Part shown: piece by piece, positions 42,453 through 46,800 of the stretch
How positions within the stretch are numbered: the stretch's first letter is position 1
Layout of the letters: each line of letters starts with the position of its first letter
Program-made: the position numbers and the translations under genes
The notes under the pieces: generated by a model
Told to the model about the DNA's origin: nothing
The model's database searches: none
What the model saw: only the letters and a program-made list of their open reading frames with translations
Source of the DNA: Guillardia theta CCMP2712
Taxonomy: Eukaryota > Protista > Cryptophyta
DNA length: 64,000 nucleotides
Direction: 5' to 3'
NCBI RefSeq assembly: GCF_000315625.1
Contig: NW_005434639.1
Span: forward strand, 257,511 to 321,510

Positions 42453-43075
42453 AGCTGATGCCAGTCTTTTATCCTTTCTATATTTTTTTGTACTGTGGGT
42501 TTCCTGTGATCCATGGATCTTCCGAGGTGTAATGGAAAGTAGTATTGTTTGTTACATTTCTTGATGTTGGAAAGTCGTTCTTTTTGTTGCCTGCTTGCAT
42601 ACATGTTCCATGTTTGTTCGCCAGCCCGTGTACCCCTACCAACATCACACAGGATTCTGGAAATAAAATACTTCAGAAGACCTCAAGGAAACCTGAATGT
42701 CCTTCTCAACATCATCTGCATCTCCACCATCATTCATCACTATCACCTCCGTCATCTACATAGTCCATGATATCATTATCTAGATCATTGTCATCTTAAT
42801 ATTCATGCTATCATCCGCTCATCATCATGATGATAGTCGTCTGTATCATCTCTATCTCCCCCATGATCACCATCACCTTCTTCGTTATCATCATCTCAAT
42901 CATCATCACCATCTCAATCATCATCTTCTCGATCTGCTTGCATATTGTTTTGGCCCCGATTGCTTGCCCACCCTACCCCTAATATCGGAATACCCCCTAC
43001 CCACCTATTCTTTTCGTATACAGACAGAAGTAGGGGACATATCACCACCCCACCCTTGTGAATTGCCAATCCAGC

Positions 43076-43218
43076 ATGGCGAGGGCCTGTTTCATGGTAG
43101 CGGTGCTGCTCCTGGAAGTGATGGGAGGAGGAGAAGCAGAAGCACGGTTGGCATCAACCATAATGCAGACAGGAACAACTGCAGGAGCAGGAGCAGGAGC
43201 AGGAGGAGGAGGAGAAGG

Positions 43219-43259
<41 letters not shown>

Positions 43260-43748
43260 GAGCAGGAGCAGAAAGAGCAGGACGAGGCAGGCTTAGAATC
43301 TTGAGGATGAGGGGAGGATGTCCGAATGGTGTGATCCCTACTCAGCAGGAGGAGGAGGCAGCGAGTCCTCTGAGGGCAAAGGTCCTCGAGCTAGAGAAGG
43401 AACGGGACAGGATAGAGGAAGAGATCAAATCCCATGCGGACCTGATGGAGCAATTGGGTGCCCCGGCGCATGTGTCGGGAGAGTTCTGGGAGAGACACAC
43501 TCCCTTGATAGATGCAGAAGGGTATCCGCGGTCGGACATACCGATCATGGAGGTGAAGGAGAGTTGCATGCTGAACTTGCTCCTTATGGTGGTGCAGGTG
43601 ATGGAAGCGAGAGGCAAGATGGCGAAGTTGAAGCTAGATCACAAGGTATGCATACTCTATGCTGCTCTCCCTCGTCGACTCAGATGCATGCCTGCAGGAG
43701 ATCTGTGAAAAGCTCGAAAAAGCCCTGGAGGAATACATAGCATCATAG
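43076..43748 (+). CDS. Nas2/PSMD9 N-terminal-domain protein (proteasome base assembly chaperone-like, no PDZ) with signal peptide + Gly/Ala-rich presequence
   Basis: ELEKERDRIEEEIK..LEQLG..PLIDAEGYPRSDIPIMEV|MEARGKMAKLKLDHK|EICEKLEKALEEY matches Nas2_N; introns at about 43553-43597 and 43646-43697; TAG at 43746-43748. Confidence 0.8.
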
Positions 43749-43813
43749 GCGACAGCTGGCCTTCCATCTCCTGTGATGGTGCTAATGTTGATTCGTGTAT
43801 CTTATTCATTTTG

Positions 43814-46800
43814 CTACATAGTTGAGGCAATTGAAGGAAAAAATTTGTTCGAGCAGCGGTGCTCGATCAAATACCCTGGTCCTTTTTCCTCCCATTCCTG
43901 CATCGACAACCGAACAGTTAGAGGACGAGAACGAGAGAAGAAGGAGAGGTTGAAGAATCGTAGATGCACGAGTGGCATGCAGGTGAGGGTACGAGTCAAT
44001 AAGGAGAGAACCAGAGAGTGGAAGGAGAAGAGGGGAAGGGAGAGAGCAAAGAGAGGTGGAGAGGAGAGAGGAGAGTGGGGAAGGGAGAGAGGCAGTATGG
44101 AGGAGGAAAGAAGAGACGAGGAGAGATAGAGGGGAAACAAGGGTGAAAGGGAGGTCCACCTGCTTCGTCAAGCAGACAGACTCGAATTTCTCATGGGCTG
44201 CGAATTTGGACGCTCCTCTCCAAGTCTCAAGGATCGGATCGTGGGCCACCACCACCTGGCATCGGAGGTCAGCGACAGCAGGAGCGGGTAGGTGAACGCA
44301 TCACGTTCAAATTTGCCCCTGCAGGAAGCAGGCAACGGATCTCGTACTCGATCCTCTCCTTGAAACCCGGAAACAGCGACCCCCCTCCACAGATGTACAC
44401 GTTCTCCGCCATCCTCATCCTGTTGCTCGTCAACCTCCGCCTCCTCCCTCCCTCCTCCGCCTCCATCACACACCTCTGGTCCATGTTGTAGCGATTCAGC
44501 ACGTTGTTGATCAGCTCTGACATCGAGTGTTGCGTCAAAACCCCTGCCATCTCCACCTCCTCTTCTTACCAGCCATGCCACAGTGCTCCAGCCCGATGAT
44601 GGAGGGCTGGAAGAGAATCTCTGGGACTTGGATGAGCTCGGTGGAGAGAGCAAGCTGAAAGTCTCGCGCGGTTGGGATGTAGACGTTGGTGCTGGGCTCG
44701 TTCTCCTGGTGGAACTTTCCCGGTGTGATTGAGGAGCCAAAAGAGGGAGAAGCGAGGTGCGAGGAGGGAGAAAGTAAGAGGCAGGAAGGGGGGGGAGAAG
44801 GAGGAAAGAGGAGCGGGGAGGTGGGAGCGAGAGAGGGGGGAGGAAGTATTCTCTGTACCTGTGACACTGGGATATGGAGAGGATCGAGCTCTAAGATCTG
44901 CGCATCCAGCTCTGTGACAGAAGATTCAGAGGGTCGCCCGATCGTACAGATAGCAAGTACCGGCCAGAGTAGCATCAACCTCCTCCTCGCTGCTGTCAGA
45001 TACTGCTTCCCTTGAAATCTGGAGCAGAGGTATGAGAGATAGGAGCAGAAAGGTGTTGAAGCGATCGGGCACGGGAGTTGAGCAGAGCAGGGGAAGAAGG
45101 GAATAAAACGCAACCCGTTCACCTGTCTGTACACGTTCCAATCATCGTCATCATCTCCAAAGTCAGATCCGTCATCTGCGTACACACAGAGGCTGAGGGA
45201 ATTGGCCGCATGCTAGAACAGTCCTACCGGCGCATCCGTCTGCATTCTTCTTCTTTGCGTCTTCCGATCCCGCAAGGGTGGAGATAATCGCCTTCATCCT
45301 CTCGTTTGAGGCCTCTGACCTCCTGTCGTTCACCATGGCCTGCATCCAGGGTGTGAGGGAGGGAATGGGGAGAAGAGGAATATGGTAGGAGAAAAGTAGT
45401 GTTGTCCCGGCCGGGGGGCGGGGGGGGGGGGTGGCGGGGGCGAGATGGAACTGAAAACAGGCAGGAAGGGAAGGGAGAGGATCAGAGCAAGGGACACAGC
45501 AAGGACTGACACAGGAGGATGAGAAGAAGTGGACAAAACCATTTGTCACCTTCTTCTTCTGCCTCTGCTGATACTTTTGAAACAAGTTTGCGTGCTAGAT
45601 TGCCGTTCAAGTCATCATTCACCACCAGCCTTGAAGGCAGTTCTCACCCTCTGTTTCGCTCCAGTCAACCACTTCTGAGGATCGAGCTTGCGCTCCTCCT
45701 CCTCCTCCTGACGTTTCCTCTGCTTCTCTGCTCACTGGTTCATTAAAACAGCAAGCAGAAGTAGCAGAAGACCTTCAGCTTGCTCCGTCTTTCGTTTCTG
45801 TAGTACGGAGAGGCAAGAAGGGGAGAGGGAGGGAGAATCGCTCAGACGTTTTAACGGTACAGGAACCGTTTCTCACCTTCTCTGCCAGACGAGCTTGCTG
45901 CAGTCCAGCCATCATCTTCTGCTTCCTCTTCTTCTCTCTCTGAACGACCGTCAGCACGACAGACAGACAGCAGGAGCCGAGAGACGTCTTCGGCGCTCAA
46001 CTTGTCGTCCGGCACGTTGAGCAGAGGGAAGCTCTCCTGAGCAAGGATCGGGATTAGGAAGAAACAAGTCGATGTGCGCAGGCCTCACCTCCTTGTCCTC
46101 TTCCGGTTCAGCTTTCAGGAACTCTTCAACCACAGGATCGTCTGAGGCATCAAACTTCATCGACGCCGGAGCAGCTTCCCCGCCCTCTCTCGCCTCACCC
46201 GCAGGAACATCGAACCCCTTCGCCTTGTGCTTTGCTCGGATATCGTTCAGCTGCCTTGACAGATTCCTGCCTCCTCATTCACTATCCTCTCCTCCTCCCC
46301 CGTTCACGAGCTTCACCCCAAGAACTTGGAGACGGAGGCAGGTTTTGTCGGCTCCGAGATGCCGAAGGCTGCGATCTTCTCGCCCACTTCATCGATCTAG
46401 TCAGGAAGCCAAATGACGGAAGCGAGAGGAGAGAGGGAAGGGACAAACATTGAGAGGGAAAGGAGGAGAGAATGGAAAGAGAATCAAGAGAGGAGGATAG
46501 GCCGGAAGCAAAGGGACACGGAGGGGAAGAACAAATAATCAGGAGGTCAGAGGAGGTGATGAAGATGATGCGGCAAAGAATCAGGTGGGGCAGGGACGGT
46601 CAATCACCGGCTGCAAGTTCTTTCCCCTTAAGTCCTTTCATCTGGTTCTTCACCGCAAAATTAGCCATCATCATCACAGTATCCAACTAAGAATCCTCTC
46701 GAAACCGTATCCTCCTGTTCTCAAACCTATATCCTTCCTACGAAACCTCCCGCCCCACACCCACCCTTACTCCTCCTCCTCCTCCTTATCATCATCATCT

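What the first reader, a model, noticed from the sequence alone, without database searches (positions are those of the whole stretch)
43076..43748. PDZ-less Nas2/PSMD9 chaperone apparently targeted to the periplastid compartment
Seen: signal peptide (ACFMVAVLLLEVMGG..), no Phe at +1, a Gly/Ala linker ending in LRILRMRGG, then only the Nas2 N-terminal helical domain and a stop; the PDZ domain is missing. Established: Nas2 is a cytosolic 19S-base assembly chaperone; cryptophyte nucleomorphs encode proteasome subunits; non-Phe bipartite leaders direct proteins to the periplastid space. Inference: a host-encoded minimal chaperone for the endosymbiont (nucleomorph) proteasome.
Basis: partly seen in the sequence, partly recalled or inferred. 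Interest (0 to 1): 0.7.

Follow-up and report, generated by a model that had tools for sequence, protein, structure and literature searches.

The report
PDZ-less Nas2 with periplastid leader
This expressed gene of the alga Guillardia theta encodes only the helical front half of the proteasome-assembly chaperone Nas2, behind an import leader of the type that sends proteins into the remnant cytoplasm of the alga's red-algal endosymbiont, so the host probably supplies a stripped-down helper for the endosymbiont's own proteasome.

Summary
Window 43076-43748 (+) is a three-exon gene of Guillardia theta (191 codons). They read straight through the stop at 43746-48, so no PDZ exon is spliced on. The mature part is a complete Nas2_N domain (Pfam E 9e-17). 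A canonical Nas2 with a PDZ domain lies elsewhere in the genome (contig C86).

The leader is real coding sequence. Orthologues in Hanusia, Baffinella and unnamed relatives all show a hydrophobic signal, a basic spacer, an [LIM]RGG motif and a Nas2_N domain without PDZ. None has an aromatic residue after the signal.

The same LRGG ending closes the leaders of cryptophyte periplastid starch synthases (12 of 12 complete orthologues). It is absent from two stromal-type leaders. I found this independently, but this scan had already reported the LRGG leader many times on other DNA of this genome.

The public model (XP_005832397.1, 96 aa) starts too late and removes a false intron, so it hides the leader.

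Periplastid targeting is likely (about 0.8). A role on the nucleomorph-encoded proteasome base is inferred, not shown. Weak points are thin RNA cover of the 5' end and near-neutral change against one close relative.

The parts
43076..43144 (+). Signal-peptide-like start (residues 1-23: MAR, hydrophobic core ACFMVAVLLLEVM, then GGGEAEA)
   Evidence: Translation. Kyte-Doolittle maximum 2.68 at residue 5. First ATG after the in-frame stop at 43031. The equivalent hydrophobic start is present in Hanusia P0003 and six other orthologues.
43145..43318 (+). Transit-peptide-like spacer (residues 24-81, net charge about +5). It includes the Gly/Ala run encoded by the GCAGGA repeat at 43173-43282.
   Evidence: repeat masked by read laying. 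The repeat length differs from the related contig L004, always in frame. Leader dN/dS is 0.26, against 0.05 for the domain, in the P0006/P0166 pair.
43292..43318 (+). LRILRMRGG, the ubiquitin-tail-like end of the leader (residues 73-81). The presumed mature protein starts at C82 (nt 43319).
   Evidence: An [LIM][RVW]G[GA] motif sits at the same place in every leader-bearing orthologue. Chance per leader is 0.7-13%. The same ending occurs on G. theta starch synthases L067 and L068, on the Grx-like ORF in L051, and on 12 of 12 complete cryptophyte starch-synthase orthologues.
43307..43309 (+). Internal ATG (M78), used as the start by the public model XP_005832397.1
   Evidence: P0004 begins MRGGCPNG. 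This Met is not conserved: L004 has it two codons earlier, and Hanusia has none between its leader and the domain.
43076..43552 (+). Exon 1 (159 codons)
   Evidence: The RNA contig joint is listed as 43550/43596 (cut +2), which corresponds to intron 43553-43597 with GT..AG ends. It is seen in runs X1, X4 and X5.
43553..43597 (+). Intron 1 (45 nt, GTGAAG..GTGCAG), in frame and without a stop
   Evidence: joints. Its removal restores the spacing seen in canonical Nas2 and extends the Pfam match from profile position 50 to 77.
43598..43645 (+). Exon 2 (16 codons)
43646..43697 (+). Intron 2 (52 nt, GTATGC..CTGCAG)
43698..43748 (+). Exon 3 coding part (16 codons plus TAG stop at 43746-43748)
   Evidence: RNA contigs run unspliced from 43696 to 43896/43901.
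43385..43736 (+). Nas2_N domain (PF18265), interrupted by the two introns. The model is a two-helix hairpin.
   Evidence: Pfam 61.2 bits on P0002, residues 19-103. AlphaFold2 pLDDT 89.3, helices 13-41 and 72-105. 3WHJ matches at TM 0.56 and rmsd 3.6 A and by phmmer at E 0.022.
43749..43896 (+). 3' UTR, overlapped by the last coding exon (43814-43896, minus strand) of a convergent actin-related gene
   Evidence: minus-strand intron 43897-44158, CT..AC; merged contigs. (L005: actin-family gene of 754 aa ending 66 nt after the stop).

Best explanation
The gene encodes a 191-residue precursor with four sections:
- a signal peptide;
- a basic, low-complexity transit-peptide-like spacer;
- an LRMRGG ending;
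- a 110-residue mature protein that is essentially one Nas2_N helical hairpin, with no PDZ domain.

Shown: the gene is expressed and spliced as described. It has no PDZ exon. It belongs to a distinct, conserved cryptophyte clade of leader-bearing Nas2_N-only proteins. It coexists with a canonical cytosolic Nas2.

Inferred with good support: the leader is a bipartite periplastid-type signal. It would take the protein through the ER-continuous outer membrane and the SELMA translocon into the periplastid compartment. There the leader is probably removed at or near the LRGG motif.

Inferred from homology only: in the compartment, the hairpin binds the C-terminal small AAA subdomain of the endosymbiont-type Rpt5. 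Yeast Nas2's N-domain does this (PDB 3WHL; from my own knowledge). The protein would thereby chaperone assembly of the Rpt4-Rpt5 module of the proteasome base, whose subunits are nucleomorph-encoded. It would do so without capping the Rpt5 tail, which is the job of the missing PDZ domain.
For: Gene structure and expression:
- Spliced contigs from three RNA runs of three studies confirm both introns and show no splice past the stop.
- P0002, from a JGI transcript contig, equals the spliced mature part.

Domain:
- PF18265 matches at E 9.3e-17, covering 76 of 79 profile positions.
- The structure model is confident, pLDDT 89, and is a hairpin like 3WHJ.

No PDZ here, canonical copy elsewhere.

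Start codon: this is the first ATG, all upstream ATGs are in frame, and there is no out-of-frame ATG before 43318. An RNA contig from run X4 covers 43086-43197.

Orthologues:
- Hanusia phi (transcriptome; no Met between its leader and the domain), Baffinella frigidus and Rhodomonas salina, plus six unnamed environmental lineages, form a set. It is separated from canonical Nas2 by a gap in E-value, from 1e-27 or better to 1e-10 or worse.
- They group together in a tree.
- They share a GAP..G.F insertion.
- In the P0006/P0166 pair the domain is under strong purifying selection, dN/dS 0.05.

Leader class:
- No aromatic residue or Leu follows the signal in any orthologue, which is the published periplastid rule (PMC3101018, PMC6105332, PMC4494062).
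- The LRGG ending is shared with starch synthases, which work in the cryptophyte periplastid compartment. All 12 complete orthologues carry it, including Teleaulax and Hemiselmis.
- It is also on a Grx-like ORF next to the second Dre2 copy.
- It is absent from the stromal-type leaders of HCF101 (SQA|F) and of the EF-hand RNA-binding protein (SSA|W).

Target: a 26S proteasome is reported in the G. theta periplastid compartment, and the nucleomorph holds 21 proteasome subunit genes (PMC6559170, PMC3514955).
Against: - The 5' end is weakly documented. Only one 138-nt contig in one run covers the signal-peptide codons. It starts at 43086, ten bases after the ATG, and has depth 13. Runs X1 and X5 show nothing upstream of the repeat, and the raw-read run had almost no reads on the gene. 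A shorter cytosolic form starting at M78 therefore cannot be excluded.
- The leader spacer is unusually long and carries four Glu residues.
- Against the closely related contig L004 the mature part shows 11 non-synonymous and 3 synonymous changes (pN/pS about 1; only 14 changes). In that relative the motif reads RIWGG.
- Foldseek does not single out 3WHJ; helical hairpins are unspecific.
- No binding partner was tested. The nucleomorph Rpt5 sequence could not be obtained here.
- Rhodomonas-type members (P0005, P0013) show no leader in the available, probably incomplete, models.
Confidence: 0.6

Rival explanations
1. The protein is periplastid-targeted as above, but its partner is not the proteasome base. 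It could act on another AAA+ machine of the compartment, such as the SELMA Cdc48. Alternatively it could be one half of a split Nas2, whose PDZ half now sits on other proteins and does something unrelated to proteasome assembly.
For: - The clade has a loop insertion (GAP..G.F) that canonical Nas2 lacks, and it lost the PDZ domain.
- Nas2-type PDZ domains with the W.G.GLLGC signature occur in two other G. theta genes without Nas2_N. These are C32:570604-570858 and C2:749402-749650, the latter behind a hydrophobic N-terminus.
- Second nuclear copies of Rpn1, Rpn2 and Rpn3 were not found, so few host-encoded periplastid proteasome parts are evident.
Against: - The only known function of Nas2_N is Rpt5 binding.
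- The residues most conserved with canonical Nas2 (L.D.EG[FY]PR.D) are invariant in the clade.
- A periplastid proteasome with nucleomorph-encoded ATPases exists (PMC6559170, PMC3514955).
Confidence: 0.2
2. The leader is not translated. The gene would make the short cytosolic protein of the public annotation, starting at M78, as a second, PDZ-less cytosolic Nas2.
For: - The public model XP_005832397.1 starts at 43307.
- Two of three RNA contig sets begin inside the repeat, and cover of 43086-43172 is low.
Against: - Four in-frame ATGs and no stop lie upstream of M78 in transcribed sequence, so a scanning ribosome would start earlier.
- M78 is not conserved.
- Hanusia has no alternative Met.
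- The leader architecture and the LRGG motif are conserved across lineages whose leaders are otherwise unalignable.
- The same public model also removes a false intron that RNA and all orthologues retain.
Confidence: 0.1
3. The gene is a decaying duplicate of Nas2 that lost its PDZ domain and has no function. Alternatively it is a secretory, ER or stromal protein rather than a periplastid one.
For: - pN/pS is about 1 against contig L004.
- The repeat in the leader expands and contracts.
Against: - The gene is expressed and correctly spliced in several studies.
- The clade is conserved across cryptophyte genera, with domain dN/dS of 0.05 in another pair.
- A proteasome-chaperone domain has no known role in the secretory lumen.
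- No aromatic residue follows the signal, and the LRGG ending matches periplastid leaders, not stromal ones.
Confidence: 0.07

Closest known systems
Nas2 (yeast) / PSMD9, also called p27 (mammals): assembly chaperone of the 19S base. N-domain structures are PDB 3WHJ and 3WHL.
   Same: The N-terminal helical hairpin domain (PF18265, 61 bits). The core motif L.D.EG[FY]PR.D is conserved. The predicted fold superposes on 3WHJ (TM 0.56).
   Different: No PDZ domain and no W.G.GLLGC tail. Adds an 81-residue bipartite leader. Has a 6-8 residue loop insertion (GAPAHVSGEFW). Forms a separate clade.
Canonical Guillardia theta Nas2 at C86:187370-188530
   Same: Same genome and the same N-domain family (50 bits on its main exon).
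   Different: The C86 gene starts MANDEEEL with no leader. It has the short canonical loop, a PDZ_6 match and the WSGRGLLGCHLNPLP end.
Host-encoded, periplastid-targeted assembly factors of G. theta, namely the CIA factors Nbp35, Nar1, Tah18, Dre2 and Grx3 (Grosche et al. 2018, PMC6105332)
   Same: The same logic applies: a nuclear gene with a non-aromatic bipartite leader supplies an assembly factor to machinery that is partly nucleomorph-encoded. The Grx-like ORF beside the second Dre2 copy has the same LRGG-ended leader.
   Different: Those leaders were localised experimentally in Phaeodactylum. This one was not, and it serves a different pathway.
Cryptophyte periplastid starch synthase leaders
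   Same: Signal peptide, then 20-35 basic residues, then L-x-L-R-G-G, then an acidic start of the mature protein.
   Different: The spacer here is about twice as long because of the Gly/Ala repeat, and the cargo is unrelated.

Membership tests
Nas2 / PSMD9 (canonical) | N-terminal helical domain Nas2_N (PF18265) | tested here: met
   61.2 bits, E 9.3e-17, profile positions 2-77 of 79 on P0002. 36.5 bits on exon 1 alone.
Nas2 / PSMD9 (canonical) | C-terminal PDZ domain ending in the W.G.G.hGC motif | tested here: not met
   The stop comes directly after the N-domain. RNA reads through it. There is no PDZ-half match in the window.
Nas2 / PSMD9 (canonical) | Binds the C-terminal domain and tail of Rpt5 | not testable with these tools
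   The nucleomorph Rpt5 sequence could not be obtained. Host Rpt5 was not recovered from the lid-domain search. No complex job was sent.
Nas2 / PSMD9 (canonical) | Cytosolic or nuclear protein without a targeting leader | tested here: not met
   An 81-residue N-terminal extension with a hydrophobic start, conserved in orthologues.
Cryptophyte periplastid-targeted proteins (bipartite leader, non-aromatic class) | N-terminal signal peptide | tested here: inconclusive
   No signal-peptide predictor was available. Heuristics fit: the n-region has R3, the hydrophobic core scores 2.68, and small residues sit at -3/-1 (G17/G19, A21/A23).
Cryptophyte periplastid-targeted proteins (bipartite leader, non-aromatic class) | The first residue after the signal is not aromatic and not Leu (PMC3101018, PMC6105332) | tested here: met
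   The possible +1 residues are G, E, E and R. The same holds in all eight leader-bearing orthologues.
Cryptophyte periplastid-targeted proteins (bipartite leader, non-aromatic class) | Basic transit-peptide-like spacer ending in [LIM]RGG. This feature was observed here and in other reports of this scan; I did not find it in the literature. | tested here: met
   LRMRGG at residues 76-81. The motif is shared with L067, L068, L051 and 12 of 12 complete starch-synthase orthologues. It is absent in two stromal-type leaders.
Cryptophyte periplastid-targeted proteins (bipartite leader, non-aromatic class) | Localisation in the periplastid compartment | not testable with these tools
   This needs a GFP fusion in Phaeodactylum or immunolocalisation.

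The most novel reading that the evidence does not exclude
In cryptophytes the endosymbiont-side Nas2 exists as a natural split.
- The N-domain is a stand-alone, host-encoded protein. It is imported into the periplastid compartment through an LRGG-ended leader and acts as a minimal chaperone for the nucleomorph-encoded Rpt ring.
- Nas2-type PDZ domains, with an intact W.G.GLLGC signature, have been moved onto other proteins. These are the genes at C2 and C32, which earlier notes of this scan describe as periplastid starch-binding adaptors.

The gene would then be expected to be lost together with the nucleomorph proteasome genes, as in Chroomonas mesostigmatica.
Probability: 0.2. Interest if true: 0.75.

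Novelty: new variant of a known kind. Interest (0 to 1): 0.58.

Why it matters
The periplastid compartment of cryptophytes keeps its own 26S proteasome, built largely from nucleomorph-encoded subunits. Nothing is known about how it is assembled. This gene is a concrete candidate for a host-supplied assembly factor.

It is also a natural experiment on what the Nas2 N-domain can do without its PDZ domain.

The public gene model hides the leader, so catalogues built on that model would probably miss this protein.

The gene adds one more well-documented case to the LRGG-ended leader class. That class gives a second, easily scored mark for telling periplastid from stromal proteins, alongside the +1 aromatic rule. 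It also points to a ubiquitin-type protease as the enzyme that removes these leaders. This scan has already reported the LRGG point on other windows, so it is not new to this report.

Tried and rejected
- UMP1/POMP (PF05348) in the genome: no match anywhere, including the controls, so uninformative.
- Second nuclear copies of Rpn3, Rpn2 and Rpn1, sought as further periplastid proteasome parts. Only single clear copies turned up, plus one weak Rpn2_C match at C165 (E 0.0096).
- Host or periplastid Rpt5 for a complex prediction. PF16450 found three loci. PF17862 found 26, among which I recognised only Rpt6-like and Rpt1-like ends. No complex job was sent.
- Foldseek against the PDB: nothing significant, with 3WHJ only at rank 20.
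- ESM Atlas: only generic Nas2_N clusters, and no taxonomy for the unnamed orthologues.
- Tree of 136 Nas2_N domains. The careful search did not finish, and the quick tree leaves the clade's origin unresolved. Named neighbours are Chlorokybus and Mesostigma; no red alga was named.
- Nar1 and Nbp35 periplastid copies: their first exons could not be identified with confidence.
- Papers on the mature N-terminus of G. theta GBSS1 (PMC1489276, PMC1489270) and the supplements of PMC3514955 and PMC6105332 are not held.
The precursor was searched as exon 1 by reference. The spliced mature part was searched as the database protein P0002, which is identical to it.
- Rejected reading: a mis-modelled full-length Nas2 with a PDZ exon further on. 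RNA and the convergent neighbouring gene exclude it.

Full report
**Identity of the sequence.** The window is contig C35:257511-321510 of an 87-Mb, 669-contig genome. The product of this gene is catalogued as XP_005832397.1 / EKX45417.1, hypothetical protein GUITHDRAFT_108684 of Guillardia theta CCMP2712, UniProt L1JAT3.

**Gene structure.**
- The ATG at 43076 follows an in-frame stop at 43031 and is the first ATG in at least 176 nt.
- The four further ATGs up to 43307 are all in the same frame. No out-of-frame ATG occurs before 43318.
- Contigs of three RNA runs from three studies are spliced at 43553-43597 (45 nt) and 43646-43697 (52 nt), both GT..AG. They then run unspliced through the TAG at 43746-48 to about 43896-43901.
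- The coding sequence is therefore 43076-43552, 43598-43645 and 43698-43748: 576 nt, 191 codons.
Its reading included the first intron as 15 extra residues.
The spliced mature part is available as the database protein P0002, from a JGI transcript contig (L005), and is identical to the window.

**No PDZ domain.**
- The transcript has no further splice.
- The 66 nt after the stop are followed by the last coding exon of a convergent actin-family gene on the minus strand (43814-43896, then its intron 43897-44158).
- Nine full-length Nas2 proteins match the window only with their N-terminal halves.
- The genome does hold a canonical Nas2 at C86. It has a leaderless start (MANDEEEL), Nas2_N in two exons (50 and 22 bits), a PDZ_6 fragment and the family's WSGRGLLGCHLNPLP end.

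**The domain.**
- P0002 matches PF18265 at 61 bits, E 9.3e-17, over 76 of 79 profile positions.
- An AlphaFold2 model built on 63 aligned sequences has pLDDT 89.3. It consists of two long helices (13-41 and 72-105) joined by a loop.
- The model superposes on the yeast Nas2 N-domain 3WHJ at TM 0.56 and rmsd 3.6 A. Foldseek does not rank hairpins specifically.
- Sequence search of the PDB finds 3WHJ/3WHL at E 0.022.

**A distinct family.** An exhaustive phmmer search found 258 relatives.
- The best relatives, after the gene itself, share the same layout: a long N-terminal extension and the domain at or near the C-terminus. They are Hanusia phi P0003, P0005, P0006, P0007, P0008, P0012, P0015 and P0029.
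- The named members are all cryptophytes: Hanusia phi, Baffinella frigidus and Rhodomonas salina.
- A profile of the set separates members (E 1e-27 or better) from canonical Nas2 (E 1e-10 or worse).
- Members share a loop insertion with invariant G, P, G and F. They group together in a quick maximum-likelihood tree (one change; SH-aLRT 67, or 92 together with P0056).
- Named neighbours in the tree are the streptophyte algae Chlorokybus and Mesostigma. That hints at an archaeplastid affinity, but the forks are weak and no red alga was named, so I leave the origin open.
- In the pair P0006/P0166 the domain has dN/dS 0.05, against 0.26-0.33 for the leader and linker.
- Against the near-identical environmental contig L004 there are only 14 coding changes, 11 of them non-synonymous (pN/pS about 1). 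I record this as a caution. The count is too small to decide.

**The leader.** All leader-bearing members have the same order of elements:
- a hydrophobic start (Kyte-Doolittle maxima 2.1-3.0);
- no aromatic residue or Leu after any plausible signal cleavage site;
- a basic spacer;
- the motif [LIM][RVW]G[GA], most often L-R-G-G;
- then acidic residues.

The rest of the leaders cannot be aligned. The chance of the strict motif in a shuffled leader is 0.7-13% per sequence. Hanusia has no Met between its leader and the domain, so there the leader must be translated. The Met used by the public G. theta model is not conserved, even in L004. That model also deletes 18 residues (GAPAHV...HTPLI) that the RNA contigs and every orthologue keep.

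**Is the LRGG ending a mark of periplastid leaders?** I looked at other G. theta genes whose products should be in that compartment.
- A Grx-like ORF 830 nt upstream of the second Dre2/CIAPIN1 copy (L051) has a signal, a basic spacer and TLCLRGG. The G. theta periplastid Dre2 and Grx3 leaders were localised experimentally by Grosche et al. (PMC6105332).
- Two starch synthases (L067, L068) have TLNLRGG and MSLRGG just before the catalytic domain. That cryptophyte starch is made in the periplastid compartment is from my own knowledge; the two papers I sought on it were not held.
- Among the 40 closest homologues of L067, all 12 with a complete hydrophobic start carry the motif at residues 40-61. 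They include Teleaulax amphioxeia and Hemiselmis. Four 5'-truncated ones also carry it. Of the 80 remaining homologues listed, the only one with a hydrophobic start and the motif (P0276) carries it inside its mature protein, not at a leader end, while P0264, a truncated hit 71% identical to L067, has the leader variant LRLYGG.
- Two stromal-type leaders, HCF101 (SQA|F) and the EF-hand RNA-binding protein of this window (SSA|W), lack the motif.

Only after this did I query the scan's notes. The LRGG-ended periplastid leader has already been reported many times on other windows of this genome, with estimates of 160-200 genes. My result agrees with those notes and was reached separately, but they are unchecked AI notes and I do not count them as support. 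Full-text searches found no description of the motif in cryptophyte leaders. A 2015 paper on cryptophyte targeting states that the +1 aromatic residue is the known discriminator (PMC4494062).

**Mechanism.** The following steps are inferred.
1. The signal peptide takes the precursor into the ER-continuous outer plastid compartment.
2. The spacer takes it through SELMA into the periplastid compartment.
3. Because it lacks an aromatic +1 residue, it stays there.
4. The leader is probably cut at the ubiquitin-tail-like LRMRGG, leaving a 110-residue hairpin that starts at C82.
5. By homology with yeast Nas2 (3WHL; from my own knowledge), the hairpin would bind the small AAA subdomain of Rpt5 during assembly of the base.

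The target exists: a 26S proteasome is reported in the G. theta periplastid compartment, and 21 proteasome subunit genes are nucleomorph-encoded in G. theta, Hemiselmis and Cryptomonas, but none in Chroomonas mesostigmatica (PMC6559170, PMC3514955). That the six Rpt ATPases are among the 21 is my recollection and was not checked here.

**Weak points.**
- RNA cover of the signal-peptide codons rests on one 138-nt contig (43086-43197, depth 13). That contig has an inverted loose end typical of a cDNA artefact. Two other runs have no contig upstream of the repeat, and the raw-read run had almost no reads on the gene.
- The GCAGGA repeat breaks assemblies, so this absence is not strong evidence. 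A short cytosolic isoform remains possible.
- No binding test could be run.

**A lead from earlier notes, partly followed.** Searching the genome with the PDZ half of a canonical Nas2 gave its best match not at C86 but at C32:570604-570858 (E 1.8e-9), with a further match at C2:749402-749650.
- Both keep the W.G.GLLGC signature, and neither has a Nas2_N domain.
- The C2 frame has a hydrophobic N-terminus but no LRGG.
- Earlier notes describe such genes as periplastid starch-binding adaptors.

This raises the possibility that the endosymbiont-side Nas2 was split into separate N-domain and PDZ modules. I rate that at about 0.2.

**Verdict.** This is a new variant of a known chaperone: a conserved, leader-bearing, PDZ-less Nas2 clade. 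It is mis-modelled in the public annotation, and its leader belongs to the LRGG class that this scan has found repeatedly.

Noticed in passing
G000 C32:570604-570858 (L074) and C2:749402-749650 minus strand (L076:1096-2217:-): Nas2-type PDZ domains sit in genes that lack Nas2_N. They carry the W.G.GLLGC signature and match the PDZ half of canonical Nas2 end to end. One is joined to TPR repeats. The other lies behind a hydrophobic N-terminus without LRGG. This may be the missing half of a split endosymbiont-type Nas2.
   Followed up: partly
window 43749-44158: A convergent actin-related gene (PF00022, 754 aa) ends at 43814 on the minus strand, 66 nt after the Nas2_N stop. Its last intron is 43897-44158. 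The two 3' ends overlap, and unstranded assemblies merge the two transcripts into one contig.
   Followed up: partly
window 43307-43748: The public model XP_005832397.1 (96 aa) starts at the internal Met and removes a false 54-nt intron encoding GAPAHVSGEFWERHTPLI. RNA contigs and all orthologues keep that segment.
   Followed up: yes
P0008 residues 204-211 and P0012 residues 241-248: Two orthologues carry a second ubiquitin-tail-like motif (LRIRGG, MRIRGG) after the Nas2_N domain, ahead of a Pro-rich tail. The domain is thus flanked by two such motifs.
   Followed up: no
L051:2152-2619:- (G000 C8, 830 nt upstream of the second CIAPIN1/Dre2 copy): A Grx-like ORF has a signal peptide, a basic spacer and TLCLRGG. 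In its glutaredoxin-like stretch the site where I would expect the CGFS motif (my recollection of Grx3/4) reads TQES, so it may be a redox-inactive Grx. It could also be the first exon of the periplastid Dre2.
   Followed up: partly
window 43173-43282 and L004:1-110: The GCAGGA hexanucleotide repeat inside the leader differs in copy number and interruptions between G. theta and a 94-96% identical environmental relative. It always stays in frame.
   Followed up: partly
window 42680-42960: A CAT/CATCAT-rich low-complexity tract lies just upstream of the gene. An RNA contig with unrelated loose ends touches it, so similar tracts probably exist elsewhere in the genome.
   Followed up: no
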